NCBI RefSeq assembly: GCF_902713615.1 | Contig: NC_052158.1 | Location: forward strand, 39,113,729-39,177,728 | DNA from: Scyliorhinus canicula | Lineage: Eukaryota | Reading direction: 5' to 3' | Length of the DNA stretch: 64,000 bases | Shown: positions 12,770 to 62,927 of the stretch, piece after piece | How positions within the stretch are numbered: position 1 is the stretch's first letter | Layout of the letters: each line of letters begins with the position of its first letter | Made by a program: the position numbers and the translations under genes | The notes under the pieces: generated by a model | The model's database searches: none | Told to the model about the DNA's origin: nothing | What the model saw: only the letters and a program-made list of their open reading frames with translations

Positions 12770-13364
12770 GGGCCAGGATTCTCCGAAATCCCAGGCAAGT
12801 GTTGACACTGGCGTAAACACCAGAGTGGTGTACGCTGGCGTTCACATCATATGTGAACCTGTCCCAGTTATTCTCCAGATTTCAGGGGGCTAGAATGGCG
12901 CTGGAATGCAGTGTGCTGCTCCAGCACTGAAATCCAGATGATGCAGGTCCATGCATGCGCACAATGGCCGTCTCCGCACCAGCGCGTGTTGCCATCTCCA
13001 CCCCTGCCCCCGCGCAACATGGCAGAGCCCTACAGGGGCCTGGCGCGGAGGAACATAGGCCCCCCTCCGCAGAATGAGCACGCCTGCCAATCTGTAGCCT
13101 CCAATCGCGAGCCTGGCCACCGTGGAGGGCCGCCCCCCAGAGTCGGACCCCCCCACCAGGACGGCCACCGCAGCCAGAACGCCGAGGTCCCGCCGGGTGG
13201 GACCATAAGTGAACCACGCTGGCGGGACTTGGCAGAACTCGGCAGGCACTCGGCCCCTCTAGCGCGGAGAATCCCCACCCCGCGTTGGAGCGGCGTGGCA
13301 GGATTCACGCGTCCCCGCCCCCCGGCGATTCTCCAACCGGGCGTGGGCTCGGAAAATCCCAGCC
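12770..13364. mobile_element. GC-rich non-autonomous TIR element (MITE-like)
   Basis: Ends GGGCCAGGATTCTCCGA ... TCGGAAAATCCCAGCC are inverted repeats. It splits L1 codons AAG AAA GCC AA|A GAC with only a 2-3 bp duplication. No coding capacity. Confidence 0.75.
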
Positions 13365-25700: not shown

Positions 25701-25756
<56 letters not shown>

Positions 25757-26481: not shown

Positions 26482-27940
26482 CCCCTGACCGAGAGGGATC
26501 CAGTGAGCAACAAAATAAACGAGGGTCGATACTCAGTTTGAGGTGTTAGAGTCAATTCAGAGTTTTAAAACTCTGGAAATAATTTTGAAATCCGCATGGA
26601 ACTATTTACTCTTTTCAGTTGTGTACGCCAGTCTCCTAACAAATTGAATCTTTTTTTTGATTATGTAGAAACATCTGAAACATGTTGAGTCGTGCCTGTG
26701 CGTGATTCAGAGATTTTCATTCCTGTTACAGTAACATTCAGAGTGTGCAGAGATGGCTCTATGGTGCTGGTCCCACTGATTTCACCAAGTAGAAAGTCTC
26801 CTCTCTTATTGAACCCAGTGGCTTATTTTGCAAATCAATTTCAGGGATAACCTGAGTCTTTGGGCATGAAAGAGTTAATGTATTACAGTGCAGGAAAATA
26901 TGGCACCAAAATCAAACAATATCGACAATTGATGCACCGTTGAGAATTGCTTCGACATTAATCAGAAAATCTTCTGACTAACAAAGTCCTTCCCATCATC
27001 TGCGAACACTGGCCCAGCTCAGGCTAACCCCTGAACAAAAGCTTTCAGTCTGCCCGCTCAGCGTGAGCCAAAGTCCTCTTAAGTGTCTCGTTGCTACGAG
27101 TTGTGTTGGACAAAGTCAGGAGTAAGCTTACGTCAACCTTCAACATGACCTGCTTTGGCGTGTTTTTCCCTCTTACTATGCCTTTGTGTGACTCCAGGTC
27201 AGTGAACAGACAAACAATAATGAAAGTGTGGAATTCCTGGGTCATTACGTATCTTCGAGGCTGAGATAGACAGATTTTTAATCAGTAAGGGAATCAAGGC
27301 TTATGATGATAAGGCGGAAAAATGGAGTTGGGATTTGTATCAGATCAGCCATGATCCCATTGAATGGCTGGGGAGACTTGATGGGCCGAGTGGCCTACTT
27401 CTGCTCCGATGTCTTGAGGTCTTATGGGATCCCATTACCCCAGTGACAGCGAATGTCCCGGCTGGAATTTTGGACATAGATCCCGGACGTGGAGAGAACA
27501 GCACAGCCTCTCCCAGCAGAATGACCAGTGAAATCAGATCGGATAACTGGGGGAGAGGAGACAGGTGCTCACACAGGGACCTCTCTGATCAGATCTTTAC
27601 AGGAAGTTGGGGGTGAGCGGAGATGTGTATTTGTGTGGCTGATGGGAATAGGGAAAATCCAGGAATATGGACGTACAGCTGGTTGGGTGGTGGCGGATCT
27701 TGGCAGTGGTCAGGTGGTACGGTTGGCGCAAAATTTGTTTGTGGTGGGGGGTGGGTAACAGGCATTGGAATTGCTGCTCCTCCGACAATGACAAAGAAAA
27801 AATACACTTCCTGCTTGATCCGGCTATTCCCAACCTCATTCCGTGCCCAGCTATCCCACACGCTGGACACCAAGCCAGAGAGATGAATTTCCGACAGATT
27901 GCTATTGGCACTGTGAAAGTGAGACATTGAGAAATCAAGT

Positions 27941-28256
27941 TGATGAGACCATCAATTCACGCGACACGTGGTTAGAAGCAAACTGTGGTTTTAATCGTCT
28001 TACAACAGAGCCTGCCTGTGACGAGATGAACTCTAGATGAACTGGCAGGCAGGCTCCGACTGCCAAGCTTTATACAACCAGTGGCGGGGGAGGAGTCATG
28101 GGCGGAGCCAAGAGTGGAGCCCAGTACAAACTTCCGTACATTCCCAGTACACCTCCCCCTAGGGGCAGAGCCGCGCAACTGCTCGTGTGCCGAGCTTACA
28201 GAGGCATGGTACAGCATGTGTGATAACAGTGAATTAAGATATTATGATTCACCACA
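27941..28256 (-). mobile_element. Solo LTR related to Gypsy A (316 bp)
   Basis: TGATGAGACCATCAATTCAC...TTCACCACA is homologous to the Gypsy A LTRs; 5-bp TSD CAAGT (27936-27940 / 28257-28261). Confidence 0.88.
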
Positions 28257-28486
28257 CAAGTATCCCACCATTGCTAAAACACATTAATGATGGGCGGGGG
28301 AGGGGGGGGGGGGGGTCAGGTTTCGTGACATCTTAGTTTTCCCCTTATACACAAAGCCCTTATCCTTCTCCTCCCTTTGTGGGCGAAGGGTGGGGGTCAA
28401 ATAATTACCCCATTTCACTCCATAGTCTGACAAAACATTTCAGAAATCTATGGCTCAAAGTGACTCAGTTTAAGAGGAACAGGACA

Positions 28487-28970
28487 TCACAGAACATAAG
28501 GGAAGAGTTTCTCAGTGAAGGTGTCAGTGAAAGTGTGGAGAACGGACATGTCATCAGCATTGTAAAAGGTCACCTGTCCTCCCTCATAGTCTGGGAAAAC
28601 TCAGATGTTCCTGGGATTCACACTCAGGATTAGGGGGACTGATGATCTTTCGCCAGCTTCCAATTTATTCCCATTTCTCAGCCACACTGCCCAGTAACCA
28701 TTGCTAAGACCCAGTCTTATTGCTCCCTTCCTATTGGCTGACTCTCTGGCCACACCCATCTCCCAATCAGTCTTGTCCCCGAGCTCCACCTCTCAGTAAT
28801 GTTTTCCTGATGTGAATCCCTCTGATCCCAGGACACACCGACACATGTCAAATTTCTCCGGAATATCAGGAATCTGTGATTTTGTATCGCTATATCTCAG
28901 TTGGACAGATCCTCAGACAGGACGAGGTGATGATGCGCTGTGTTTGGGTCCAGGGGAGGTGAGGCTGGAA
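28487..28970 (-). pseudogene. PRY-SPRY (B30.2) terminal exon of a TRIM/butyrophilin-type gene, pseudogenised
   Basis: Acceptor TTTCCCCAG| at 28971-28972. Translation LDPNTAHHHLVLSEDL-(1-nt frameshift)-LRYSD...[37 protein letters not shown]...GYW...[17 protein letters not shown] has two nonsense codons (one at 28793-28795) and a frameshift. Confidence 0.9.
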
Positions 28971-29044
28971 CTGGGGAAATTTAAAGAGACATCTTGTTAA
29001 ATATTTTAGACAATGGAAGGTGGGTGGATACAGGTTAACAGCCT

Positions 29045-32000
29045 GGGCCAGATTCTCAGTTTCTGAGTCTAATTGTTGACGCCAAAGGAGAATCCGTGGA
29101 CTTCCACGTCAGAAATATCAGCGCCACACCTGCACTGATTCTGCTACCGGTGAGGGGCTAGCACCGGGACCGCGTGGAACACCATCAAAACCCATGAAAA
29201 ACAGTGCGGGAATCGCCGGGTCCGTGATGGACAAGCTGCAGCTGTGCTTGAGCAATACTCCCCCCCCACGCCCCCCACACACACTGATCAGGGCCGAAAA
29301 GATGGGACAGATTGTGCTGGAGCACCCATACAGCTGATGGGTCGGCTGGGGCTAGAGGGCACACAAGGGGGTGCACCCTGGGGGTGGGGGGCAGGGTCAC
29401 CTATACAACCCAGGGCAGCAGGTTTAAAGGGGGCTGTCAGCGACATGCGCAGCTGCATGGCTGCCTTGCCGGCTGCGGTGATGGTGTTGCGTACCCGTCC
29501 ACCCCGTTCCCACAGCCCACCTGCTGCCCCCCACCCCAGGACTGGCAGAAACCCCCCCCCCCGGCCAGCGGCACGGATATCGGTGAAGTATGGCGGTGCT
29601 GGACACTGTCTGTACGCCCTCTCTCTCTCTCAGCAGCCACCACACCAGGTTCACGATTTGTGAGAGCACACAGCCCTTCGGAGGCGGAGAATTGCGGGTG
29701 GGCCCACTAATGATATATGAACGCTGTTTCAACTGCGTGCTGTGTGCGGCGCAGAGAGGAGGAGCATTGCGATTCAGTGCCAAATCGGCACCTGCCGCGA
29801 TTTCGGCATCGGTAGCTATTCTCGGCCTGCTCGCACGCCCCGATTTCGGCATCGGTAGCTATTCTCGGCCTGCTCGCACGCCCCGATTTCGGCATCGGTA
29901 GCTATTCTCCGCCTGCTCGCACGCCCCGATTGCGGTATCGGTAGCTATTCTCCGCCTGCTCGCACGCCCCGATTTCGGCATCGGTAGCTATTCTCCGCCT
30001 GCTCGCACGCCCCGATTTCGGCATCGGGAGCTATTCTCCGCCTGCTCGCACGCCCCGATTTCGGCATCGGGAGCTATTCTCCGCCTGCTCGCACGCCCCG
30101 ATTTCGGCATCGGTAGCTATTCTCCGCCTGCTCGCACGCCCCGATTTCGGCATCGGTAGCTATTCTCCGCCTGCTCGCACGCCCCGATTTCGGCATCGGG
30201 AGCTATTCTCCGCCTGCTCGCACGCCCCGATTTCGGCATCGGTAGCTATTCTCCGCCTGCTCGCACGCCCCGATTTCGGCATCGGGAGCTATTCTCCGCC
30301 TGCTCGCACGCCCCGATTTCGGCATCGGGAGCTATTCTCCGCCTGCTCGCACGCCCCGATTTCGGCATCGGGAGCTATTCTCCGCCTGCTCGCACGCCCC
30401 GATTTCGGCATCGGTAGCTATTCTCCGCCGGCTCGCACGCCCCGATTTCGGCATCGGGAGCTATTCTCCGCCTGCTCGCACGCCCCGATTTCGGCATCGG
30501 GAGCTATTCTCCGCCTGCTCGCACGCCCCGATTTCGGCATCGGTAGCTATTCTCCGCCTGCTCGCACGCCCCGATTTCGGCATCGGTAGCTATTCTCCGC
30601 CTGCTCGCACGCCCCGATTTCGGCATCGGGAGCTATTCTCCGCCTGCTCGCACGCCCCGATTTCGGCATCGGTAGCTATTCTCCGCCTGCTCGCACGCCC
30701 CGATTTCGGCATCGGGAGCTATTCTCCGCCTGCTCGCACGCCCCGATTTCGGCATCGGGAGCTATTCTCCGCCTGCTCGCACGCCCCGATTTCGGCATCG
30801 GGAGCTATTCTCCGCCTGCTCGCACGCCCCGATTTCGGCATCGGGAGCTATTCTCCGCCTGCTCGCACGCCCCGATTTCGGCATCGGTAGCTATTCTCCG
30901 CCTGCTCGCACGCCCCGATTTCGGCATCGGGAGCTATTCTCCGCCTGCTCGCACGCCCCGATTTCGGCATCGGTAGCTATTCTCCGCCTGCTCGCACGCC
31001 CCGATTTCGGCATCGGGAGCTATTCTCCGCCTGCTCGCACGCCCCGATTTCGGCATCGGTAGCTATTCTCCGCCTGCTCGCACGCCCCGATTTCGGCATC
31101 GGGAGCTATTCTCCGCCTGCTCGCACGCCCCGATTTCGGCATCGGGAGCTATTCTCCGCCTGCTCGCACGCCCCGATTTCGGCATCGGTAGCTATTCTCC
31201 GCCTGCTCGCACGCCCCGATTTCGGCATCGGTAGCTATTCTCCGCCTGCTCGCACGCCCCGATTTCGGCATCGGTAGCTATTCTCCGCCTGCTCGCACGC
31301 CCCGATTTCGGCATCGGTAGCTATTCTCCGCCTGCTCGCACGCCCCGATTTCGGCATCGGTAGCTATTCTCCGCCTGCTCGCACGCCCCGATTTCGGCAT
31401 CGGTAGCTATTCTCCGCCTGCTCGCACGCCCCGATTTCGGCATCGGTAGCTATTCTCCGCCTGCTCGCACGCCCCGATTTCGGCATCGGTAGCTATTCTC
31501 CGCCTGCTCGCACGCCCCGATTTCGGCATCGGGAGCTATTCTCCGCCTGCTCGCACGCCCCGATTTCGGCATCGGGAGCTATTCTCCGCCTGCTCGCACG
31601 CCCCGATTTCGGCATCGGTAGCTATTCTCCGCCTGCTCGCACGCCCCGATTTCGGCATCGGGAGCTATTCTCCGCCTGCTCGCACGCCCCGATTTCGGCA
31701 TCGGTAGCTATTCTCCGCCTGCTCGCACGCCCCGATTTCGGCATCGGTAGCTATTCTCCGCCTGCTCGCACGCCCCGATTTCGGCATCGGGAGCTATTCT
31801 CCGCCTGCTCGCACGCCCCGATTTCGGCATCGGGAGCTATTCTCCGCCTGCTCGCACGCCCCGATTTCGGCATCGGGAGCTATTCTCCGCCTGCTCGCAC
31901 GCCCCGATTTCGGCATCGGTAGCTATTCTCCGCCTGCTCGCACGCCCCGATTTCAGCATCGGGAGCTATTCTCCGCCTGCTCGCACGCCCCGATTTCGGC

Positions 32001-35000
32001 ATCGGGAGCTATTCTCCGCCTGCTCGCACGCCCCGATTTCGGCATCGGTAGCTATTCTCCGCCTGCTCGCACGCCCCGATTTCGGCATCGGGAGCTATTC
32101 TCCGCCTGCTCGCACGCCCCGATTTCGGCATCGGTAGCTATTCTCCGCCTGCTCGCACGCCCCGATTTCGGCATCGGTAGCTATTCTCCGCCTGCTCGCA
32201 CGCCCCGATTTCGGCATCGGGAGCTATTCTCCGCCTGCTCGCACGCCCCGATTTCGGCATCGGGAGCTATTCTCCGCCTGCTCGCACGCCCCGATTTCGG
32301 CATCGGGAGCTATTCTCCGCCTGCTCGCACGCCCCGATTTCGGCATCGGGAGCTATTCTCCGCCTGCTCGCACGCCCCGATTTCGGCATCGGGAGCTATT
32401 CTCCGCCTGCTCGCACGCCCCGATTTCGGCATCGGTAGCTATTCTCCGCCTGCTCGCACGCCCCGATTTCGGCATCGGTAGCTATTCTCCGCCTGCTCGC
32501 ACGCCCCGATTTCGGCATCGGGAGCTATTCTCCGCCTGCTCGCACGCCCCGATTTCGGCATCGGGAGCTATTCTCCGCCTGCTCGCACGCCCCGATTTCG
32601 GCATCGGGAGCTATTCTCCGCCTGCTCCACGCCCCGATTTCGGCATCGGGAGCTATTCTCCGCCTGCTCGCACGCCCCGATTTCGGCATCGGGAGCTATT
32701 CTCCGCCTGCTCGCACGCCCCGATTTCGGCATCGGGAGCTATTCTCCGCCTGCTCGCACGCCCCGATTTCGGCATCGGTAGCTATTCTCCGCCTGCTCGC
32801 ACGCCCCGATTTCGGCATCGGGAGCTATTCTCCGCCTGCTCGCACGCCCCGATTTCGGCATCGGGAGCTATTCTCCGCCTGCTCGCACGCCCCGATTTCG
32901 GCATCGGTAGCTATTCTCCGCCTGCTCGCACGCCCCGATTTCGGCATCGGTAGCTATTCTCCGCCTGCTCGCACGCCCCGATTTCAGCATCGGTAGCTAT
33001 TCTCCGCCTGCTCGCACGCCCCGATTTCGGCATCGGTAGCTATTCTCCGCCTGCTCGCACGCCCCGATTTCGGCATCGGTAGCTATTCTCCGCCTGCTCG
33101 CACGCCCCGATTTCGGCATCGGGAGCTATTCTCCGCCTGCTCGCACGCCCCGATTTCGGCATCGGTAGCTATTCTCCGCCTGCTCGCACGCCCGATTTCG
33201 GCATCGGTAGCTATTCTCCGCCTGCTCGCACGCCCCGATTTCGGCATCGGGAGCTATTCTCCGCCTGCTCGCACGCCCCGATTTCGGCATCGGTAGCTAT
33301 TCTCCGCCTGCTCGCACGCCCCGATTTCGGCATCGGGAGCTATTCTCCGCCTGCTCGCACGCCCCGATTTCGGCATCGGGAGCTATTCTCCGCCTGCTCG
33401 CACGCCCCGATTTCGGCATCGGAGCTATTCTCCGCCTGCTCGCACGCCCCGATTTCGGCATCGGTAGCTATTCTCCGCCTGCTCGCACGCCCCGATTTCG
33501 GCATCGGGAGCTATTCTCCGCCTGCTCGCACGCCCCGATTTCGGCATCGGTAGCTATTCTCCGCCTGCTCGCACGCCCCGATTTCGGCATCGGGAGCTAT
33601 TCTCCGCCTGCTCGCACGCCCCGATTTCAGCATCGGTAGCTATTCTCCGCCTGCTCGCACGCCCCGATTTCGGCATCGGGAGCTATTCTCCGCCTGCTCG
33701 CACGCCCCGATTTCGGCATCGGGAGCTATTCTCCGCCTGCTCGCACGCCCCGATTTCGGCATCGGGAGCTATTCTCCGCCTGCTCGCACGCCCCGATTTC
33801 GGCATCGGTAGCTATTCTCCGCCTGCTCGCACGCCCCGATTTCGGCATCGGGAGCTATTCTCCGCCTGCTCGCACGCCCCGATTTCGGCATCGGGAGCTA
33901 TTCTCCGCCTGCTCGCACGCCCCGATTTCGGCATCGGGAGCTATTCTCCGCCTGCTCGCACGCCCCGATTTCAGCATCGGTAGCTATTCTCCGCCTGCTC
34001 GCACGCCCCGATTTCGGCATCGGGAGCTATTCTCCGCCTGCTCGCACGCCCCGATTTCGGCATCGGGAGCTATTCTCCGCCTGCTCGCACGCCCCGATTT
34101 CGGCATCGGGAGCTATTCTCCGCCTGCTCGCACGCCCCGATTTCGGCATCGGGAGCTATTCTCCGCCTGCTCGCACGCCCCGATTTCGGCATCGGTAGCT
34201 ATTCTCCGCCTGCTCGCACGCCCCGATTGCGGTATCGGTAGCTATTCTCCGCCTGCTCGCACGCCCCGATTTCGGCATCGGGAGCTATTCTCCGCCTGCT
34301 CGCACGCCCCGATTTCGGCATCGGGAGCTATTCTCCGCCTGCTCGCACGCCCCGATTTCGGCATCGGGAGCTATTCTCCGCCTGCTCGCACGCCCCGATT
34401 TCGGCATCGGTAGCTATTCTCCGCCTGCTCGCACGCCCCGATTTCGGCATCGGGAGCTATTCTCCGCCTGCTCGCACGCCCCGATTTCGGCATCGGGAGC
34501 TATTCTCCGCCTGCTCGCACGCCCCGATTTCGGCATCGGGAGCTATTCTCCGCCTGCTCGCACGCCCCGATTTCAGCATCGGGAGCTATTCTCCGCCTGC
34601 TCGCACGCCCCGATTTCGGCATCGGGAGCTATTCTCCGCCTGCTCGCACGCCCCGATTTCGGCATCGGGAGCTATTCTCCGCCTGCTCGCACGCCCCGAT
34701 TTCGGCATCGGTAGCTATTCTCCGCCTGCTCGCACGCCCCGATTTCGGCATCGGGAGCTATTCTCCGCCTGCTCGCACGCCCCGATTTCGGCATCGGGAG
34801 CTATTCTCCGCCTGCTCGCACGCCCCGATTTCGGCATCGGTAGCTATTCTCCGCCTGCTCGCACGCCCCGATTTCGGCATCGGTAGCTATTCTCCGCCTG
34901 CTCGCACGCCCCGATTTCGGCATCGGGAGCTATTCTCCGCCTGCTCGCACGCCCCGATTTCGGCATCGGGAGCTATTCTCCGCCTGCTCGCACGCCCCGA

Positions 35001-38000
35001 TTTCGGCATCGGTAGCTATTCTCCGCCTGCTCGCACGCCCCGATTTCGGCATCGGGAGCTATTCTCCGCCTGCTCGCACGCCCCGATTTCGGCATCGGGA
35101 GCTATTCTCCGCCTGCTCGCACGCCCCGATTTCGGCATCGGGAGCTATTCTCCGCCTGCTCGCACGCCCCGATTTCGGCATCGGTAGCTATTCTCCGCCT
35201 GCTCGCACGCCCCGATTGCGGTATCGGTAGCTATTCTCCGCCTGCTCGCACGCCCCGATTTCGGCATCGGGAGCTATTCTCCGCCTGCTCGCACGCCCCG
35301 ATTTCGGCATCGGTAGCTATTCTCCGCCTGCTCGCACGCCCCGATTTCGGCATCGGTAGCTATTCTCCGCCTGCTCGCACGCCCCGATTTCGGCATCGGG
35401 AGCTATTCTCCGCCTGCTCGCACGCCCCGATTTCGGCATCGGTAGCTATTCTCCGCCTGCTCGCACGCCCCGATTTCGGCATCGGGAGCTATTCTCCGCC
35501 TGCTCGCACGCCCCGATTTCGGCATCGGTAGCTATTCTCCGCCTGCTCGCACGCCCCGATTTCGGCATCGGGAGCTATTCTCCGCCTGCTCGCACGCCCC
35601 GATTTCGGCATCGGGAGCTATTCTCCGCCTGCTCGCACGCCCCGATTTCGGCATCGGTAGCTATTCTCCGCCTGCTCGCACGCCCCGATTTAGGCATCGG
35701 TAGCTATTCTCCGCCTGCTCGCACGCCCCGATTTCGGCATCGGTAGCTATTCTCCGCCTGCTCGCACGCCCCGATTTCGGCATCGGTAGCTATTCTCCGC
35801 CTGCTCGCACGCCCCGATTTCGGCATCGGTAGCTATTCTCCGCCTGCTCGCACGCCCCGATTTCGGCATCGGGAGCTATTCTCCGCCTGCTCGCACGCCC
35901 CGATTTCGGCATCGGTAGCTATTCTCCGCCTGCTCGCACGCCCCGATTTCGGCATCGGTAGCTATTCTCCGCCTGCTCGCACGCCCCGATTTCGGCATCG
36001 GTAGCTATTCTCCGCCTGCTCGCACGCCCCGATTTCGGCATCGGGAGCTATTCTCCGCCTGCTCGCACGCCCCGATTTCGGCATCGGGAGCTATTCTCCG
36101 CCTGCTCGCACGCCCCGATTTCGGCATCGGGAGCTATTCTCCGCCTGCTCGCACGCCCCGATTTCGGCATCGGTAGCTATTCTCCGCCTGCTCGCACGCC
36201 CCGATTTCGGCATCGGTAGCTATTCTCCGCCTGCTCGCACGCCCCGATTTCGGCATCGGTAGCTATTCTCCGCCTGCTCGCACGCCCCGATTTCGGCATC
36301 GGGAGCTATTCTCCGCCTGCTCGCACGCCCCGATTTCGGCATCGGGAGCTATTCTCCGCCTGCTCGCACGCCCCGATTTCGGCATCGGGAGCTATTCTCC
36401 GCCTGCTCGCTCGCCCCGATTTCGGCATCGGGAGCTATTCTCCGCCTGCTCGCACGCCCCGATTTCGGCATCGGGAGCTATTCTCCGCCTGCTCGCACGC
36501 CCCGATTTCGGCATCGGGAGCTATTCTCCGCCTGCTCGCACGCCCCGATTTCGGCATCGGTAGCTATTCTCCGCCTGCTCGCACGCCCCGATTTCGGCAT
36601 CGGTAGCTATTCTCCGCCTGCTCGCACGCCCCGATTTCGGCATCGGTAGCTATTCTCCGCCTGCTCGCACGCCCCGATTTCGGCATCGGTAGCTATTCTC
36701 CGCCTGCTCGCACGCCCCGATTTCGGCATCGGGAGCTATTCTCCGCCTGCTCGCACGCCCCGATTTCGGCATCGGTAGCTATTCTCCGCCTGCTCGCACG
36801 CCCCGATTTCGGCATCGGGAGCTATTCTCCGCCTGCTCGCACGCCCCGATTTCGGCATCGGGAGCTATTCTCCGCCTGCTCGCACGCCCCGATTTCGGCA
36901 TCGGTAGCTATTCTCCGCCTGCTCGCACGCCCCGATTTCAGCATCGGTAGCTATTCTCCGCCTGCTCGCACGCCCCGATTTCGGCATCGGGAGCTATTCT
37001 CCGCCTGCTCGCACGCCCCGATTTCGGCATCGGGAGCTATTCTCCGCCTGCTCGCACGCCCCGATTTCGGCATCGGGAGCTATTCTCCGCCTGCTCGCAC
37101 GCCCCGATTTCGGCATCGGGAGCTATTCTCCGCCTGCTCGCACGCCCCGATTTCGGCATCGGTAGCTATTCTCCGCCTGCTCGCACGCCCCGATTTCGGC
37201 ATCGGGAGCTATTCTCCGCCTGCTCGCACGCCCCGATTTCGGCATCGGTAGCTATTCTCCGCCTGCTCGCACGCCCCGATTTCGGCATCGGGAGCTATTC
37301 TCCGCCTGCTCGCACGCCCCGATTTCAGCATCGGGAGCTATTCTCCGCCTGCTCGCACGCCCCGATTTCGGCATCGGGAGCTATTCTCCGCCTGCTCGCA
37401 CGCCCCGATTTCGGCATCGGGAGCTATTCTCCGCCTGCTCGCACGCCCCGATTTCGGCATCGGTAGCTATTCTCCGCCTGCTCGCACGCCCCGATTTCGG
37501 CATCGGTAGCTATTCTCCGCCTGCTCGCACGCCCCGATTTCGGCATCGGGAGCTATTCTCCGCCTGCTCGCACGCCCCGATTTCGGCATCGGGAGCTATT
37601 CTCCGCCTGCTCGCACGCCCCGATTTCGGCATCGGGAGCTATTCTCCGCCTGCTCGCACGCCCCGATTTCGGCATCGGGAGCTATTCTCCGCCTGCTCGC
37701 ACGCCCCGATTTCGGCATCGGGAGCTATTCTCCGCCTGCTCGCACGCCCCGATTTCGGCATCGGTAGCTATTCTCCGCCTGCTCGCACGCCCCGATTTCG
37801 GCATCGGGAGCTATTCTCCGCCTGCTCGCACGCCCCGATTTCGGCATCGGTAGCTATTCTCCGCCTGCTCGCACGCCCCGATTTCGGCATCGGGAGCTAT
37901 TCTCCGCCTGCTCGCACGCCCCGATTTCGGCATCGGGAGCTATTCTCCGCCTGCTCGCACGCCCCGATTTCGGCATCGGGAGCTATTCTCCGCCTGCTCG

Positions 38001-39283
38001 CACGCCCCGATTTCGGCATCGGGAGCTATTCTCCGCCTGCTCGCACGCCCCGATTTCGGCATCGGGAGCTATTCTCCGCCTGCTCGCACGCCCCGATTTC
38101 GGCATCGGGAGCTATTCTCCGCCTGCTCGCACGCCCCGATTTCGGCATCGGGAGCTATTCTCCGCCTGCTCGCACGCCCCGATTTCGGCATCGGGAGCTA
38201 TTCTCCGCCTGCTCGCACGCCCCGATTTCGGCATCGGGAGCTATTCTCCGCCTGCTCGCACGCCCCGATTTCGGCATCGGGAGCTATTCTCCGCCTGCTC
38301 GCACGCCCCGATTTCGGCATCGGTAGCTATTCTCCGCCTGCTCGCACGCCCCGATTTCGGCATCGGTAGCTATTCTCCGCCTGCTCGCACGCCCCGATTT
38401 CAGCATCGGTAGCTATTCTCCGCCTGCTCGCACGCCCCGATTTCGGCATCGGTAGCTATTCTCCGCCTGCTCGCACGCCCCGATTTCGGCATCGGTAGCT
38501 ATTCTCCGCCTGCTCGCACGCCCCGATTTCGGCATCGGGAGCTATTCTCCGCCTGATCGCACGCCCGATTTCGGCATAGGGAGCTATTCTCCGCCTGCTC
38601 GCACGCCCCGATTTCGGCATCGGGAGCTATTCTCCGCCTGCTCGCACGCCCCGATTTCGGCATCGGGAGCTATTCTCCGCCTGCTCGCACGCCCCGATTT
38701 CGGCATCGGTAGCTATTCTCCGCCTGCTCGCACGCCCCGATTTCGGCATCGGGAGCTATTCTCCGCCTGCTCGCACGCCCCGATTTCGGCAGCGGTAGCT
38801 ATTCTCCGCCTGCTCGCACGCCCCGATTTCGGCATCGGGAGCTATTCTCCGCCTGCTCGCACGCCCCGATTTCGGCATCGGTAGCTATTCTCCGCCTGCT
38901 CGCACGCCCCGATTTCGGCATCGGGAGCTATTCTCCGCCTGCTCGCACGCCCCGATTACGGCATCGGTAGCTATTCTCCGCCTGCTCGCACGCCCCGATT
39001 TCGGCATCGGGAGCTATTCTCCGCCTGCTCGCACGCCCCGATTTCGGCATCGGTAGCTATTCTCCGCCTGCTCGCACGCCCCGATTTCGGCATCGGGAGC
39101 TATTCTCCGCCTGCTCGCACGCCCCGATTTCGGCATCGGGAGCTATTCTCCGTTGTTCGCACGCCCCGATTTCGGCATCGGTAGCTATTCTCCGCCTGCT
39201 CGCACGCCCCGATTTCGGCATCGGTAGCTATTCTCCGCCTGCTCGCACGCCCCGATTTCAGTGTCGGCTGACAGAGAATCCTG
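29045..39283. mobile_element. GC-rich TIR element hosting the 43-bp array
   Basis: Starts GGGCCAGATTCTC and ends GAGAATCC (GATTCTC/GAGAATC core shared with the other TIR elements). The array occupies its right subterminal region. Confidence 0.6.
29799..39260. repeat. Tandem array of about 220 x 43 bp: GATTTCGGCATCGG(T/G)AGCTATTCTCCGCCTGCTCGCACGCCCC
   Basis: Period 43 (unit starts at 29799, 29842, 29885...; last partial unit at 39254). Five 1-nt deletions seen, no spacers, very high homogeneity apart from one T/G site. Confidence 0.99.
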
Positions 39284-39871
39284 ATGTCTGTATAAATGGA
39301 CTCAGCACCCAGTCCATAATTTCTGCATCAGTAAATACTGCCGAGTGTTTACAGAGTATAACCTTCAGTGTGTACTGTGAACAGCTGTTCACTGTGCAGT
39401 GAATCTCACTGGAAAATCTGGATGGCAAATAAAAATGTTGCCCTCACGCTTGAAGCTTTCAACCTTAGGTTCCAGATAAAGAATGACTCCCTGAGTGAGG
39501 TTCCAGACGCTCCTCTCCCAGCGATCCTTACCCAATAGCAGGCAGCACCTTCAGGAAAGGGGGTGAGAGAGTAGGAAATACTGCAGAAAAAACCTAATGC
39601 GCGCCTGGAAGTGTGTTGCAGGCAGGTTTCATTGAGGCATTCAAGTGGGTATTAGATGAGTATTTGAACAGAAAAAATGTGCAGGGGTGTGGGGAAAAGG
39701 CAGGGGAATGGCACTGTCAGGTGGAAAATACAATGGAGAATCAGGATGAATACGGAGGGAATAGAGGGGAAGTGAAAACTGTAGAATTGATAACGTTACA
39801 CCCTTTTTCAAAAAGGGGAGCAAGGATAATGCCGCCAACTACAGAGCAGTCAGCCTGGCTTCTGATGTTCA

Positions 39872-40910
39872 GGTGGCACGGTGGTACAGTGGTTAGCACT
39901 GCTGCCTCACAGCGCCAGGGACCCGGGTGCAATTCTGGCCTTGGGTGACTGTCTGTGTGGAGTTTGTACGTTCTCTGTGTCTGCTCTGGCTTCCTCCCAC
40001 CGTCCAAAGATGTGCAGTTTAGGTGGATTGGCCTTGCTAAATTGCCCCTTAGTGTCCAAAGGTTAGGTTGGGTTATGTGAAGAGGGCAGGGCGGTGGATT
40101 GGCCATTCTAAATTGCCCCTTAGTCCCTCTCCAAAAAGGTTAGGTGGAGTTACTTGGATAGGGTGCAGGACGGTAGCATTGTGGATAGCACAATTGCTTC
40201 GCAGCTCCAGAGTCCCAGGTTCGATTCCGGCTTGGGTCACTGTCTGTGCGGAGTCTGCACATCCTCCCCGTGTCTGCTTGGGTTTCCTCCGGGTGCTCCG
40301 GTTTCCTCCCACAGTCCAAAGATGTGCAGGGTAGGTGGATTGGCCATGATAAATTGCCCTTAGTGTCCAAAATTGCCCTTAGTGTTGGGTGGGGTTGCTG
40401 GGTTATGGGGATAGGGTGGAGGTGTTGACCTTGGGTAGGGTGCTCTTTCCAAAGGCCGGTGCAGACTCGATGGGCTGAATGGCCTCCTTCTGCACTGCAA
40501 ATTCTATGATTTTATGAACTTCCGGAAACTATAGTTTTTTATAATAAAATAATAATAATCTTTATTGTCACAAGCAGGCTTACATTAACATTGCAGTTAA
40601 TGTACTGTGAAAATCCCCTAGCCACCACACTCCGGCGCCTGGTCAGGTACACAGAGGGAGAATTCAGAATGTCCAATGAAATGAAATGAAAATCGCTTAT
40701 TGTCACAAGTAGGCTTCAAATGAAGTTACTGTGAAAAGCCCCTATTCACCTAACAGCACGCCCTTTGGGACTTGTGGGAGGAAACCGGAGCATATGGAAG
40801 AAACCCACGCAGGCACGGGGCGAACGTGCAGACTCCACAGACAGCAGTGACCCAAGCCAGGAATCGAATCTGGGAACCTGGAGCTGTCAAGCAACAGTGC
40901 TACCCACTGT
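39872..40910. mobile_element. Cluster of V-SINEs and second-family SINE fragments
   Basis: Repeated tRNA-like heads (GGTTCGATTCC), V-domain, (AAT)n and (GAAAT)n tails in both orientations. Confidence 0.8.
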
Positions 40911-41741
40911 TTTGCAGATTATACGAAGATTGCAAGTGTTGGCAACTGTGATGAGGATAGTCTTCAAAAGGACATGGATATTGGTGGATTGGACAGACAA
41001 GTGGCAGATGAAGTTCAAATCAAGAGACGTGTGAGGTGATTCATTTTGGAAGGAAGAATGTGGAGACACATTCGAAGTGCGGGCTAAACTGGTGAGTTAA
41101 AATAAACAGCAATAGTTAAAGCAGAGCGGACTTGTCTGAGGCAAGGGGGAGGTTGAAACAAACCAGTTGAAACAGCTTTTTGAAGACATCCAGGGTCTAA
41201 CGGTTGGAGGGCGGCGCCCAATGGGCTGGCGTTTTGGAGGGTCGTGTGTCGGGGAGGAGAGAGAGAGAGAGATATGTGATGGGGAGGGGGTTGGGAGGGA
41301 AGAGAGTGGGGAGGGCCGGAGGGGTAGCTGAGGTAGGTGGGTGCTGAGGGAGGGTGCCGGCTTGGAGAAGGGGTCCGGGCCTGGCTGAGGCGGACCCCTG
41401 GGGCGAGTGACGGGACAGACAGACAGGGAGGGAACTGGAAGGGCAGAGGTCTGCAGCGCAACCCTACGAAACTTGGCTGGAAGGAGCGGCGGCGAAATGG
41501 CTGAACAAACTGCTGAGACGTCTCTGCATCTGATCACATGGACTCACTTCTGGATTTTGTAGCTGATCATTGGCGGCCAGAATGCTGCATTGTTTGACCT
41601 GAGAAAATGGGTGTTAATGCATCTAACTACCCTCCATCATTCTCCCAGAGCGTAGGAGGAAATTCACAAGCTCAACAAACCTTTATAGGGACATCCTCCT
41701 ATTTACATCAAGGATATGGATGTGAATCAAAATTATATAGG

Positions 41742-42104: not shown

Positions 42105-44902
42105 TTGCAGGTTCCAGGATTTAGATATTTCTGTAAGAACAGAGAAGATGGTAAAAGAGGGGGGTGTGGCATTGTTAATCAAGGAAAGTATTACGGCAGC
42201 TGAAAGGACGTTTGAGGACTCGCCTACTGAGGTAGTATGGGCCGAGGTTAGGAACAGGAGAGGAGAGGTCACCCTGTTGGGAGTTGTCTATAGACCTCCA
42301 AATAGTTCCAGAGATATAGAAGAAAGGATAGCAAAGATGATTCTCGACAGGAGCGAGAGTAACAGGGTAGTTGTTATGGGGGACTTTAACTTTCCAAATA
42401 TTGACTGGAAATACTATAGTTCGAGTACTATAGATGGGTCAGTTTTTGTGCAGTGTGTGCAGGAGGGTTTTCTGACACAGTATGTAGACAGGCCAACAAG
42501 GGGCGATGCCACATTGGATTTGGTACTGGGTAATGAACCCGGCCAGTTGTTAGATTTAGATGTAGGTGAGCACTTTGGTGATAGTGATCACAATTCGGTT
42601 ATGTTTACTTTAGCGATGGGCAGGGATAAGTATATACCGCAAGGCAAGAATTATAGCTGGGGGAAAGGCAATTATGATGCTATTCGACAAGATTTAGGAT
42701 GTATAGGATGGGGAAGGAATCTGCAGGGGATGGGTACAATCGAAATGTGGAGCTTTTTCAAGGAACAGCTACTGCGTGTCCTTGATAAATATGTACCTGT
42801 CAGGCAGGGAGGAAGTTGTCGAGCAAGGGAACCGTGGTTTACTAAGGAAGTTGAAGCACTTGTCAAGAGGAAGAAGAAGGCTTATGTTAGGATGAGACAT
42901 GAAGGCTCAGTTAGGGCACTTGAGAGTTACAAGTTAGCCAGGAAGGACCTAAAGGGAGAGTTAAGAAGAGCGAGGAGAGGACATGAAAAGTCGTTGGCGG
43001 ATAGGATCAAGGAAAAGCCTAAGGCTATCTGTAGGTATATCAGAACAAAAGAATGACTAGAGTAAGATTAGGGCCAATCAAGGATAGTAGTGGAAAGTTG
43101 TGTGGAATCAGAGGAGATAGGGGAAGCGTTAAATGGATATTTTCCGTCAGTGTTTACACTGGAGAAAGACAATGTTGTCGAGGAGAATACTCAGGTACAG
43201 TCGACCAGGCTAGATGGGATTGAGGTTCACAAGGAGGAGGTGTTAGCAATTTTGGAAAGTGTAAAAATAGATAAGTCCTCTGGGCTAGATGGGATTTATC
43301 CTAGGATTCTCTGGGAAGCCAGGGAGGATATTGCAGAGCCTTTGTCCTTGATCTTTATGACGTCTTTGTCGACAGGAATAGTGCCGGAAGACTGGAGGAT
43401 AGCAAATGTTGCCCCTTGTTCAAGAAGGGGAGTAGAGACAACCCTGGTAATTATAGACCTGTGAGCCTTACTTCGGTTGTGGGTAAAATGTTGGAAAAGG
43501 TTATAAGAGATAGGGTTTATAATCATCTTGAAAAGAACAAGTTGATTAGCGATACTCAACACGGTTTTGTTTACTTTAGCGATGGGCAGGGATAAGTATA
43601 TACCGCAAGGCAAGAATTATAGCTGGGGGAAAGGCAATTATGATGCTATTCGGCAAGATTTAGGATGTAAGGGTAGGTCATGCCTCACAAACCTTATTGA
43701 GTTTTTTGAGAAGGTGACCAAACAGGTGGATGAGGGTAAAGCGGTTGATGTGGTGTATATGGATTTCAGTAAGGCGTTTGATAAGGTTCCCCACGGTAGG
43801 CTATTGCAGAAAATACGGAAGTATGGGATTGAAGGTGATTTAGCGGTTTGGATCAGTAATTGGCTAGCTGAAAGAAGGTTGATGGCAAATGTTCATTCTG
43901 GAGTTCAGTTACTAGTGGTGTACCGCAAGGATCTGTTTTGGGGCCACTGCTGTTTGTCATTTTTATAAATGACCTGGAAGAGGGTGTAGAAGGATGGGTT
44001 AGTAAATTTGCAGATGACACAAAGGTTGGTGGAGTTGTGGATAGTGCTGAAGGATGTTATAGGTTACAGAGGGACATAGATAAGCTGCAGAGCTGGGCTG
44101 AGAGGTGGCAGATGGAGTTTAATGCGGAAACGTGTGAGGTGGTTCACTTTGGAAGGAGTAACAGGAATGCAGAGTACTGGGCTAACGGCAAGATTCTTGG
44201 TAGTGTAGACGAACAGAGAGATCTCGGCATCCAGGTACATAAATCCCTGAAAGTTGCCACCCAGGTTAATAGGGCTGTTAAGAAGGCATATGGTGTGCTA
44301 GCCTTTATCAGTAGGGGGATTGAGTTTCGGAGCCACGAGGTCATGATGCAGCTGTACAAAACTCTGGTGCGGCCGCACCTGGAGTACTGCCTGCAGTTCT
44401 GGTCACCACATTATAGGAAGGATGTGGAAGCTTTGGAAAGGGTTCAGAGGAGATTTACTAGGATGTTGCCTGGTATGGAGGGAAGGTCTTACAAGGCAAG
44501 GCTCAGGGACTTGAGGTTGTTTTCGTTAGAGAGGAGAAGGCTGAGAGGTGACTTAATAGAGACATATAAGATAGCCAGAGGGTTAGATAGGGTGGACAGT
44601 GAGAGTCTCTTTCCTCGGATGGTGATGACCAACACAAGGGGACATAGCTTTAAATTGAGGGGTGGTAGATATAGGACAGATGTCAGAGGCAGTTTCTTTA
44701 CTTAGAGAGTAGTAGGGGTGTGGAACGCCCTGCCTGCAACAGTAGTAGACTCACCAAATTTAAGGGCATTTAAGTGGTCACTGGATAGACATATGGATGA
44801 AAATGGAATAGTGTAGGTCAGATAGGCTTCAGATGGTTTCACAGGTCGGCGCAACATCGAGGGCCGAAGGGCCCGTACTGCGCTGTAATGTTCTATGTTC
44901 TA
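42105..44902 (+). mobile_element. CR1-clade LINE (HER1-like), 5'-truncated, disrupted ORF2
   Basis: Endonuclease (GGVALLIK, VMGDFNFP, GDSDHN) and RT (YMDFSKAFDKVPH, FADDTK, HLEYCLQFWSP) motifs with frameshifts; 3' tail ending (TGTTCTA)n. Confidence 0.93.
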
Positions 44903-48237: not shown

Positions 48238-48865
48238 GGGCGGAATTCACCCCTACCCGGCAGGGTGGGCTGTACCTGCGCCGAGAAGTGGCGTGAACCA
48301 CTCCAGCGTCGGGCCAATTGGAAGTTGCGGAATCTTTCGCACCTTCAGGGGCTAGGCCGGCACCGGTAGGGTTGGCGCAGCGCCAACTGGTGCTGAAGGG
48401 CCTCCGCGTGTGCTGGCGTCATCCCAGCGCATGCACAGGGGGGTTCTTCTCCACGTTGGCCATGACGGAGGTTGACAGCAGCCGGCGGGGAGGGAAAGAG
48501 TGCCTCCACGGCACAGGCCCGCCCGCGGATCGGTGGGCCCCGATCGTGGGCCAGGCCACCGTGGGGGCACCTGCGGGGGCCAGATCCCCCAGCGCCCCCA
48601 CAAGGACTCTGCAGGCCGCCCATGGAGCCAGGTCCTGCTGGTACAGACCTGGTTTGATTTACGCCGGTGGGACTGGCCGAATACGGGCAGCCGCTCGGCC
48701 CATTGCAGGCCGGAGAATCGCTGGGGGGTCCGCTGCCAGTGGTCGCTGAGGGCGCGCCGCTATTCCCGCCCCCACCAAAATCCCGGCGTCGGTGCGGTAG
48801 GGCAGCATTCGTGCCGCCCCCCCGGCGATTCTCCAACCCGGCGGGGGCGTTGGAGAATCCCGCCC
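48238..48865. mobile_element. GC-rich TIR element (MITE-like)
   Basis: GGGCGGAATTC ... GATTCTCC-N17-GGAGAATCCCGCCC; homologous to 12770-13364. Confidence 0.75.
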
Positions 48866-54105: not shown

Positions 54106-54482
54106 TTCCTCTATTTCACCGTTTCTGTGAATTCAGTCAAGTTAGTTTGAAAGGATTTGCCTGTCAGATCTGTGGTGGCTCTGATTGAGTGTCTTTAAAA
54201 CTGAGCGAGACCCAGACTGGCGGGTAAGTGTTTTACCCCCAACCCCACCACGCTTGGCATGCTTATAGGTGAAGTTCAGTTGGCCAACGCTTATAGTGTG
54301 ACCTCTCCTCACACTCTCTTTTGTTTAACCAAACTCTATCCCTCCCACTAACACCATCACCTCCGCTAACCGGTGGCTGTCTCCCCCCCCCCCCACCCGC
54401 CCCCCCAAATACCAAATAGCTGGCACAGGTATGTAGTCCCAAATGGCCACCCTCTGTGCTCTATCATTCTCTGGTAACTTAC

Positions 54483-54758
54483 CTGCCTCCACACTCAGTG
54501 TCTTGGACAGGCTACTGTGATGAACCTGACATGTATAGCTCCATGGGTCATTGTCCTCGAGTTTCACGAGAATCTCCATTCTGTACGTGTCATCATGGTT
54601 TGGCACCACTGTCACCGTAAGGTCGTCCGGCACGGGCTCTCCATTCTGCAGCCACGTGGCATTGATGGCACGGGGGTAGAAGGGAGTGACGAGGCACAGG
54701 AGAGTCATGGGCACCTCGTCACTGGAGATGTTTTTGAAAACCAGCACTTCAGGGGCAA
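54483..54758 (-). CDS. MHC class I-like alpha3 (Ig C1-set) exon
   Basis: 276-nt exon, phase 1-1, acceptor TTCTTCCTCAG|, donor CAG|GTAAGT. Reads APEVLVF...LLCLVTPFYPRAINATWLQNG...VPNHDDTY...YTCQVHHSSL with no stops. Confidence 0.93.
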
Positions 54759-55377: not shown

Positions 55378-56023
55378 GGCCGGGATTTCGGAGATGTGTT
55401 GATGCCAGCATAAACACCGGAGTGGTGCACGGCGAAGTTGACGGGCCTACTGGCCCAGTGATTCAGCATCCCTCAGGAGGCCAGCACGGTGCCGGAGCGC
55501 TGCGCGCTGCTCCAGCATTGAAAGGCGGCCCTGCACTGCCAGCGCGGGTCTGCGCATGCACGCGGCAGCCGTCTCCACGCCGGCGCCGAGCAATGTGGCA
55601 GAGCCCTACAGCGGGCCCGCACTGAAGGAGGTAAGCCCTCTCCAGATCGCGGGCGCCCGCCCATCGGTAGCCCCCGATCGCGGGCCTGGTCGCCGTGGAG
55701 CCTCCCCCGGAGTCAGATTCCCCCGCATACCCCCCCCCAAACAGGATGGCTACTGCGGCTGCAGGTCCGAGCTCTCGCCGGGTGGTACCAGGTTGGAACC
55801 ATGCCAGCGAGACTCGTCGGAACTCGGCTGGAATTTGGCCGGTCGACTGCGGAGAATCACTGCGGGGCCTCTTTCAGTGACCCCCGACTGGCAGTGCGCC
55901 GACCACGCGGGCGCGATTGGTGGTGACCAGAGAATCACTTCCTGCTGTCGGAGCGGCCTATCGTGGATTTTGGGCGGGAACGGCAATTCTACGACCCGGC
56001 GCGTGCTCGGAGAATCCCGTCCC
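55378..56023. mobile_element. GC-rich TIR element (MITE-like)
   Basis: GGCCGGGATTTC ... GGAGAATCCCGTCCC; homologous to 12770-13364. Confidence 0.75.
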
Positions 56024-62276: not shown

Positions 62277-62927
62277 GGCCGGGATTCTCCTAGACTCCGT
62301 GCCAAAATCGCGCCCGGCGCGGGGACGAAGAATGGGGCCTCAGATCCACAATTGAGTCCAAAGCTGGGACGTGATTCTCCGGCAACCAGAGAATCGCCGC
62401 CAGCCGCGTGCAAGTAGTCGACGGGGTGCCGGGCGGGGGCCATTGAAACAGACCCCCACGGCGATTCTCTGCGGTCGACCGGCCAAGATCCAACATGAGT
62501 CCACCTGGCAGGAGCTCCGACTTGCAGCCACAGTGGCCGTCCTGGTAGGGGGGTGGGGCTATCAGACTCTGAGGGGGGGGGCGGGGGCTTCACGATGGCC
62601 AGGCCCGAGATCGGGGGCCACCGATCGGCACGGCGTGTGATCTGGAGGGGGGTGGGGCCTAGTTTCCTCTGCATCAGCCCGCTGGGTGGTTCCGCCATGT
62701 TGCGCGGGCATGACACGGAAGCGGTTGCCATGCGCATATGCTGAACCGCACCCAGCAGTGCAGCGCCGCGTATTGGTGCTGGGGCTGCGTGGAGCACTCC
62801 GGCACCATGCTGGCCCCCTGTGGGCTACAGAATCGCTGGGCCAAGAGGCCCGTTGATGCTGGCATGAAACACACCGGTGTTTAGGCCGGCGTCAATGCTT
62901 AGCCGCGTTTTTGCAGAATCTCAGCCC
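62277..62927. mobile_element. GC-rich TIR element (MITE-like)
   Basis: GGCCGGGATTCTCC ... GCAGAATCTCAGCCC; homologous to the other copies. Confidence 0.75.

What the first reader, a model, noticed from the sequence alone, without database searches (positions are those of the whole stretch)
29045..39283. A 9.5-kb satellite born inside the end of a TIR element
Seen: about 220 near-identical 43-bp units sit between the body of a GC-rich element (start GGGCCAGATTCTC) and its terminal GAGAATCC. Each unit contains ATTCTCC, the core found in the terminal hairpins (ATTCTCC-N17-GGAGAAT) of the four related elements here. Each also has CCGAT-N6-ATCGG and (T)AGCT(A) inverted motifs. Established: satellites can arise from MITE or Helitron internal repeats. 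Inference: a very recent local amplification that creates hundreds of putative transposase- or TF-binding sites between a TRIM pseudogene and an MHC-like gene.
Basis: partly seen in the sequence, partly recalled or inferred. Interest (0 to 1): 0.7.

Follow-up and report, generated by a model that had tools for sequence, protein, structure and literature searches.

The report
Transposon-end minisatellite in shark MHC region
A 9.5-kb run of 220 nearly identical 43-base units has grown inside one end of an old, decayed jumping-gene copy; it is a clean vertebrate example of a known process, but it is probably not as recent as it looks.

Summary
The array is real: 29794-39259, 220 units of 43 bp, about 98% alike, 64% G+C, with 6 CpG per unit. 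Two variants (G or T at unit position 20) are mixed in an order that looks random.

It lies between a 750-bp GC-rich body and a terminal GAGAATCC.

Its kinship to the four other elements in the window rests on short colinear blocks. It is not statistically secure.

Unit depth in reads points to hundreds of copies, not tens of thousands. So this is a local minisatellite, not a genome-wide satellite.

"Very recent" is doubtful. All eight runs of a related species hold essentially every canonical 31-mer of both variants. That species also has contigs bridging the element's left end and a body-to-unit joint, yet its closest flank contigs are only 92-94% identical.

I found no ORF, Rfam match, unusual fold or poly-A RNA on the array.

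Earlier scan notes on other DNA of this genome describe similar transposon-born arrays and Harbinger-type MITEs. This is a new member of a known kind. The letter-perfect cross-species units are the one unexplained point.

The parts
29046..29793 (+). Body of the host element: GC-rich, CpG-depleted, with 5' end GGCCAGATTCTC. It is a member of a very high-copy dispersed repeat family.
   Evidence: In both species, summed word depth rises from about 5 (single copy, up to 29026) to 10^3-10^4.6 from about 29058 onward (tables 2 and 3). CpG observed/expected is 0.56. The 5' blocks are colinear with el1-el4, but nhmmer gives E 1.7.
29794..39259 (+). Minisatellite of 220 units of 43 bp. There are two main variants: G at unit position 20 (116 exact copies) and T (80 exact copies).
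   Evidence: GC is 0.64, GC skew about -0.23, CpG observed/expected 1.43 (1312 CpG). Mean pairwise difference is 1.6% per site. Edge units are the most divergent and carry T.
39260..39287 (+). 3' remainder of the element: a degenerate continuation of the unit, then the terminal GAGAATCC (39274-39281). The exact end is uncertain. CTG at 39288-39290 would repeat the left flank CTG (29043-29045).
   Evidence: The inverted terminal match to the 5' end is only about 12 of 13 with one indel, by eye. The local alignment itself found 9 of 10 matching bases. This side was not covered by reads.
28330..28930 (-). Context: B30.2 (PRY-SPRY) pseudo-exon of a TRIM-like gene with in-frame stops. It ends about 115 bp from the element's 5' end.
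12771..13364 (+). Related element el1 (594 bp, flanks AAG/AAA).
48342..48865 (+). Related element el2. Its 5' end is unclear. It holds the only exact ATTCTCC-N17-GGAGAAT.
55378..56022 (+). Related element el3 (645 bp, 3-bp duplication CAT/CAT).
62277..62926 (-). Related element el4 (650 bp, 3-bp duplication CAT/CAT on the + strand). Its 3' end is the best match to the unit plus terminus of the host element.
54325..54747 (-). Context: Ig C1-set exon of the MHC class I-like gene.

Best explanation
One old copy of a very abundant, GC-rich, non-autonomous TIR element sits just upstream of a dead TRIM B30.2 exon. The element is probably of the PIF/Harbinger type.

Its 3' subterminal segment held a 43-base stretch followed by a degenerate repeat of its own first 19 bases or so. 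Replication slippage and then unequal exchange between these direct repeats grew the segment into a 220-unit, 9.5-kb GC-rich minisatellite.

Repeated unequal exchange or conversion keeps the interior units alike. The edge units escape this, so they stay more divergent and keep the probably older T variant.

The array is confined to this locus or a few loci. It, or its seed with both variants, existed before the split from a related species. It is most likely neutral DNA with no sequence-specific function.

Shown: the array, its position, the repeat nature of the body, the copy-number order, and the unit's presence in the relative.

Inferred: the slippage seed, the homogenisation, neutrality and the superfamily.
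For: - Array and its homogeneity.
- Edge effect: 6 non-position-20 differences in each of the first and last 20 units, against 0-3 in each interior block. Units 1-5 and 219-220 all carry T.
- Seed: the last full unit is followed by a start-of-unit copy that matches for 11 bases and then degenerates.
- Body is a dispersed repeat whose left edge lies between 29026 and 29058.
- Terminal motifs and colinear blocks are shared with el1-el4. Perfect 3-bp duplications flank el3 and el4.
- Unit depth is 2188-2812 in a second individual, against about 5 for single copy.
- In the related species, depth on canonical units is 719-2905. Joints 29784>30013 and 29807>30068 link body to unit. Contigs span 28810-29115 across the element's 5' end.
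- The relative's word share of 0.12-0.13 equals the 0.115 share of canonical array words in the query.
- The process is well documented for MITEs: Xstir and miDNA4 in Xenopus (reviewed in PMC12628747) and DTC84 in a clam (PMC3879986).
Against: - The unit's similarity to the 3' ends of el1-el4 is not significant: 9/300 at best and 55-131/1000.
- nhmmer finds the host's 5' part only at E 1.7.
- No duplication flanking the host element can be shown, and its terminal inverted match is about 12 bases.
- The right boundary was not checked with reads.
- Summed contig depth is not a copy number, so my estimate could be off by up to tenfold.
- Letter-perfect sharing of both variants with a species whose flank differs by 6-8% fits simple neutral turnover poorly (note).
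- The random G/T order (runs test z -0.53) and the scarcity of private variants may come from assembly polishing. The fine structure may therefore not be real.
Confidence: 0.68

Rival explanations
1. One reading: the array arose very recently, in this species only, by one local burst.
For: Units differ by 1.6% per site. CpG observed/expected is 1.43, against 0.56 in the host body and 0.41-0.46 in the flanks.
Against: The related species holds essentially all canonical words of both variants. It has depth 719-2905 on the units and body-to-unit joints.
Confidence: 0.1
2. The unit is a normal internal module, one to a few copies, of a mobile MITE subfamily present at tens to hundreds of loci in both species, like DTC84 or miDNA4. 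This locus is just the most expanded copy, and the relative's units come from other loci.
For: The 74 bases spanning the array start (29750-29823) have depth 137-1230, or 27-260 copy equivalents. That means other genomic copies share this 3' region. It would explain identical units in two species without any constraint.
Against: The bins holding the first units have low depth (52-182). Body segments reach 10^3-10^4 while the units do not rise above what one array of this size would give. No second copy lies in this 64-kb window.
Confidence: 0.2
3. The minisatellite is unrelated to the element. It is a pre-existing or captured tandem repeat that merely abuts a transposon fragment, and the shared ATTCTCC is coincidence.
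For: There is no significant unit-to-family alignment. Most family copies part from this copy at 29671 (loose ends).
Against: GAGAATCC lies 15 bases past the array. Family-level depth continues to the array start. The stretch from the last unit's ATTCTCC through the spacer to the terminus aligns colinearly with the 3' end of el4.
Confidence: 0.1
4. The array is kept by selection as a working element. Candidates are an unmethylated CpG-island-like block, a platform of about 220 binding sites, or a recombination hotspot between TRIM and MHC-like genes.
For: CpGs are intact. Both variants are letter-perfect in a species with 6-8% flank divergence.
Against: No poly-A RNA reads fall on it in one run. 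Its fold is no more stable than shuffles. There is no Rfam match and no ORF. Identity of a 43-base consensus at 7% divergence has a chance of about 0.05, so it is not compelling alone.
Confidence: 0.07
5. The array exists, but its length and internal order are largely products of assembly and polishing.
For: The G/T order is random. Three of the five 42-bp units lack one base of a homopolymer run (CCCC or GGG), the sort of error long reads make.
Against: An independent individual shows unit depth several hundred times single copy.
Confidence: 0.15

Closest known systems
Xstir and miDNA4 MITEs of Xenopus with internal tandem arrays (as reviewed in PMC12628747)
   Same: A vertebrate non-autonomous TIR element whose internal segment exists as tandem copies that can expand. 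The proposed route is microhomology or slippage, then recombination.
   Different: Here I can show only one greatly expanded locus, 220 units at the 3' subterminal edge. I could not show family-wide single units or short arrays. The superfamily is probably Harbinger-type, not Tc1/mariner.
DTC84 tandem-repeat-containing MITE of the clam Donax trunculus (PMC3879986)
   Same: Core repeats lie between flanks holding short inverted repeats. A palindrome within each repeat is proposed as a hotspot for length change. The unit here also holds a short palindrome, CCGAT-N6-ATCGG.
   Different: DTC84 has up to five ordered core repeats in every mobile copy. Here there are 220 units with no fixed variant order in one immobile copy, and the palindrome is no more stable than chance.
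Tetris foldback transposon and its emerging satellite in Drosophila virilis (PMC4079207)
   Same: Tandem repeats from a DNA transposon's terminal region supply the building blocks of longer arrays.
   Different: Tetris repeats lie within long foldback TIRs and have spread into a true satellite. The catshark unit stays at hundreds of copies.
Classical GC-rich hypervariable minisatellites of mammals (my own knowledge)
   Same: A 10-100 bp unit, a kilobase-scale array, high G+C, purine/pyrimidine strand asymmetry and interspersed unit variants.
   Different: Length variation between individuals and meiotic instability were not tested. The origin inside a transposon is explicit here.
Other transposon-born arrays noted earlier in this genome (SINE-born 33-bp minisatellite, CR1 5' monomer array)
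   Same: A short piece of a mobile element grown into a young-looking array inside a decayed copy.
   Different: The source element is of a different class, a TIR DNA transposon. The 33-bp array recurs at several loci, and one copy lies in this window at 52192-53102.

Membership tests
Transposon-borne (MITE-derived) tandem array | Head-to-tail array lying inside the boundaries of a transposon copy | tested here: met
   The array is at 29794-39259. The left repeat boundary, by depth, lies at 29026-29058. The terminal GAGAATCC is at 39274. The right boundary rests on the motif only.
Transposon-borne (MITE-derived) tandem array | Unit homologous to a segment of the element family | tested here: inconclusive
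   Colinear alignments to the 3' ends of el1-el4 give shuffle tests of 9/300 at best and 55-131/1000.
Transposon-borne (MITE-derived) tandem array | Other family copies carry the unit singly or in short arrays | not testable with these tools
   No eukaryotic genome search is on hand. Depth hints only: 27-260 copy equivalents at 29750-29823.
PIF/Harbinger-type non-autonomous element | 3-bp target site duplication | tested here: inconclusive
   Relatives el3 and el4 have perfect CAT/CAT, and el1 has AAG/AAA. For the host element, CTG/CTG holds only if it ends at 39287.
PIF/Harbinger-type non-autonomous element | Terminal inverted repeats | tested here: inconclusive
   The host element has about 12 of 13 bases with one indel by eye, and 9 of 10 in the local alignment. 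el1 has a 34-column imperfect inverted match between its ends.
PIF/Harbinger-type non-autonomous element | Ends matching an autonomous partner that encodes a DDE transposase and a Myb-like protein | not testable with these tools
   No such gene lies in the window, and no genome search was possible.
Same family as the four in-window elements | Statistically supported sequence homology | tested here: not met
   blastn finds none. A profile built from el1, el3 and el4 finds 29050-29166 colinearly, but at E 1.7.
GC-rich minisatellite | Unit 10-100 bp, kilobase-scale array, GC-rich with strand asymmetry, interspersed variants | tested here: met
   43 bp, 9.47 kb, GC 0.64, GC skew -0.23. G and T variants are interspersed.
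GC-rich minisatellite | Length polymorphism between individuals | not tested
   Needs long reads or Southern blots from several animals.
Satellite DNA in the classical sense | Very high genomic copy number in long arrays at many sites | tested here: not met
   Summed unit depth is about 400-600 times single copy, while the neighbouring body reaches 10^3-10^4. This is a rough measure.

The most novel reading that the evidence does not exclude
The array is under constraint or biased conversion. Both unit variants are kept letter-perfect, and all six CpGs per unit stay intact, in two species whose flanks differ by 6-8%. That would make it a conserved 9.5-kb CpG-island-like block, for example an unmethylated boundary, a binding-site platform or a recombination hotspot, between a TRIM remnant and an MHC class I-like gene.
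Probability: 0.07. Interest if true: 0.6.

Novelty: new member of a known kind. Interest (0 to 1): 0.3.

Why it matters
It is a tidy vertebrate case of a DNA-transposon end turning into a long minisatellite, and the seed structure can still be read at the array's edges. It adds cartilaginous fish to a phenomenon best described in frogs, bivalves and insects.

It also carries two practical warnings. Near-identity of units does not prove recent origin. And the internal order of such arrays in long-read assemblies may be a polishing product.

If the cross-species identity reflects constraint, the locus would become a test case for how a CpG-dense repeat stays intact in a methylated vertebrate genome.

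Tried and rejected
- Higher-order repeat: none. Autocorrelation of unit types is flat for lags of 1-59 units.
- Coding potential: no ORF of 90 aa or more lies within the array. The unit has no ATG, GTG or TTG, and the period is not a multiple of 3.
- Known RNA family: no Rfam match over 27500-41000.
- Special secondary structure: three units and the 3' terminus were folded as DNA on both strands. The z-scores were 0.97, -0.11, -0.10 and -0.62, so the inverted motifs are ordinary for this composition.
- Second copy of the unit or the body in the window: none.
- The unit in JGI metagenome contigs: no exact match. This was expected and says little.
- Homology to the four neighbouring elements by blastn, by profile and by shuffle-tested local alignment: not significant.
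- Expression: one oligo-dT RNA run gives no reads on the array. Reads fall only on other repeats. This is a weak negative.
- Literature: no paper on this array or on catshark minisatellites or MITEs of this type in the held library.
- By eye only: resemblances of the G-rich strand to the mammalian minisatellite core, to a CTCF site, and of CACGCCCC to a KLF/SP box. All are imperfect and I did not pursue them.
Full report
**Observation**

Tandem Repeats Finder reports a single array at 29794-39259 with period 43, 220.3 copies, 98% matches and no indel column. No other array in the 64-kb window comes near it.

I segmented the array unit by unit. There are 220 full units, 215 of 43 bp and 5 of 42 bp. 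After them comes a partial unit that matches the unit start for 11 bases and then degenerates.

Two forms dominate. One has G at unit position 20 (116 exact copies) and the other has T (80 exact copies). Three minor forms occur 3-5 times each, and 13 units are singletons. Mean pairwise difference is 1.6% per site.

The window contains no N.

- ATTCTCC is in 218 of 220 units.
- CCGAT-N6-ATCGG and AGCT are in the consensus.
- GGGCCAGATTCTC is at 29045.
- GAGAATCC is at 39274.

**Context**

On the minus strand at about 28330-28930 lies a PRY-SPRY (B30.2) reading frame with several in-frame stops. One piece matches Pfam SPRY at E 4.5e-6. This is a dead TRIM-type exon that ends about 115 bp from the element.

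Downstream there is a LINE with endonuclease and reverse-transcriptase pieces at 42148-44705. An Ig C1-set exon lies at 54325-54747 on the minus strand (E 2e-14). Earlier notes of this scan call this gene the catshark UFA gene, and they call the genome the small-spotted catshark. I did not check the species, and the run organisms are coded.

**What the host is**

blastn finds no second copy of the body 29045-29793 in the window. Four elements of about 600-650 bp are mutually related: el1 at 12771-13364, el2 ending at 48865, el3 at 55378-56022 and el4 at 62277-62926 on the minus strand.

A MAFFT alignment places the host's blocks colinearly with theirs. On the 5' side these are GGCCAGATTCTC, TTGACGCC, GATTCTGC and GGGGCTAGCA. 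On the 3' side they are GGCGGAGAAT and the terminal GAGAATCC. However, a profile built from el1, el3 and el4 finds the host's 5' part only at E 1.7. The kinship is therefore a resemblance and is not established.

Laid reads give independent support that the body is a mobile-element copy. Single-copy depth is about 5 up to 29026. From about 29058 onward the summed depth jumps to 10^3-10^4.6, in a second individual of the same species (X5) and in two studies of a related species (X7, X13).

el3 and el4 have perfect 3-bp flanking duplications (CAT/CAT), and el1 has AAG/AAA. From established knowledge, this points to the PIF/Harbinger superfamily. Earlier notes on other parts of this genome reach the same reading.

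For the host element itself, a duplication (CTG/CTG) appears only if the element ends at 39287. Its terminal inverted match is only about 12 bases.

**Relation of the unit to the element**

The array occupies the place between the last internal GGAGAAT block and the terminus. The stretch from the ATTCTCC of the last unit, through its spacer, to the terminal GAGAATCC aligns colinearly with the 3' end of el4.

Shuffle tests on such alignments are marginal: 9/300 at best and 55-131/1000. The exact ATTCTCC-N17-GGAGAAT hairpin exists only in el2.

At the right edge, the full 43-base unit is followed by a degenerate copy of its own first 19 bases or so. This 1.4-copy arrangement is the usual seed for slippage. 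I take it as the likely origin, but that is an inference.

**Array dynamics**

- There is no higher-order periodicity.
- The G/T order cannot be told from random: 103 runs against 106.8 expected, z -0.53.
- The first and last 20 units each carry 6 differences outside position 20. Interior blocks of 20 carry 0-3.
- Units 1-5 and 219-220 all have T. T is therefore probably the older state, and the edges escape homogenisation, as expected under unequal exchange.
- The array has 1312 CpG, observed/expected 1.43. The host body has 0.56 and the flanks 0.41-0.46.
- Only one CpG transition type is seen, in 8 units.

**Copy number and other genomes**

In the second individual, summed depth on canonical units is 2188-2812 against about 5 for single-copy contigs. 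G-variant and T-variant contigs stack on the same place, and I do not know how multi-fitting contigs are placed. With those uncertainties, the result fits a few hundred to perhaps two thousand copies. That is the order of the assembled array, not a genome-wide satellite, and it rules out a gross assembly expansion.

The related species shows several things:
- Depth on the same bins is 1955-2905 (X7) and 719-1196 (X13).
- Joints link the end of the body to a canonical unit: 29784>30013 with 12 other letters between, and 29807>30068.
- Contigs of about 307 bases span 28810-29115, across the element's 5' end, with 25-26 differences (table 8).
- All eight of its runs hold 0.12-0.13 of the sampled words of window:28500-30100.

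I computed that 11.5% of that query's 31-mers are canonical array words. These are 74 distinct words: 12 shared, 31 specific to the G variant and 31 specific to the T variant. The relative therefore holds essentially all of them, and so has both variants letter-perfect.

The insertion, and the unit with both variants, therefore predate the split. The alternative is that the unit travels with a mobile subfamily present in both species.

**An unexplained point**

The flank differs by 6-8% between the species, yet the unit does not differ at all. About three consensus changes per 43 bases would be expected, and the chance of none is about 0.05. A shared mix of two variants is also not expected under fast turnover, while the very low private-variant load is not expected under slow turnover.

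Possible ways out:
- Biased conversion or selection.
- Paralogous rather than orthologous flank contigs. B30.2 exons are a multigene family, and four contigs of the relative overlap 28929.
- A mobile carrier subfamily that holds the unit.
- Assembly polishing with multi-mapped reads. This would erase private variants and randomise a near 50:50 site, which is the pattern seen.

I could not separate these, because both read tools were at their caps (note).

**Function**

I found nothing that argues for a function:
- No ORF.
- No Rfam family.
- DNA folds no more stable than shuffles.
- No reads on the array in one oligo-dT RNA run.

The idea of hundreds of transposase or transcription-factor sites remains untested.

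**Comparison and verdict**

Growth of internal or subterminal repeats of MITEs into arrays is well described. Examples are Xstir and miDNA4 in Xenopus and several invertebrate cases, DTC84 and Tetris. This genome also has SINE-born and LINE-born arrays noted earlier.

By unit size, length, composition and variant interspersion, the array is a GC-rich minisatellite. I file it as a new member of a known kind, of modest interest. The cross-species identity of both variants is the only feature worth a further look.

Noticed in passing
window 52192-53102: A second tandem array, 27.7 copies of a 33-bp unit at 91% identity. Earlier notes of this scan describe a SINE-born 33-bp minisatellite at several loci of this genome. 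I did not compare the units.
   Followed up: no
window 27974-28269: An extremely high-copy repeat in the window's own species, with summed depth up to 133,000. At 28048-28269 the related species' contigs show no depth at all. It also draws most of the RNA reads laid. It looks like a lineage-specific, transcribed short repeat.
   Followed up: no
window 55378-56022, 62277-62926, 48865: Two elements of the GC-rich TIR family have the same 3-bp flank, CAT/CAT, and a third ends next to ATG, its reverse complement. This suggests a target preference, as earlier notes on Harbinger-type MITEs in this genome claim.
   Followed up: partly
window 14535-18303, minus strand: A run of long ORFs of 208, 469 and 329 aa. 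By eye their translations look like the integrase, reverse transcriptase/protease and zinc-knuckle gag of an LTR retrotransposon. I did not run them against Pfam.
   Followed up: no
window 23143-23201 and 25702-25754: Two long poly-C tracts: 59 bases at 82% and 53 bases at 100%.
   Followed up: no
window 29671: Most genomic copies of the host element's family part from this copy here. Their consensus continues with about 30 bases that this copy lacks (loose ends in 25-30 contigs per run). This copy therefore seems to carry a small internal deletion relative to its family.
   Followed up: partly
window 42148-44705: LINE remnant on the + strand, with an endonuclease domain (E 9.6e-13) and reverse-transcriptase pieces.
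   Followed up: partly
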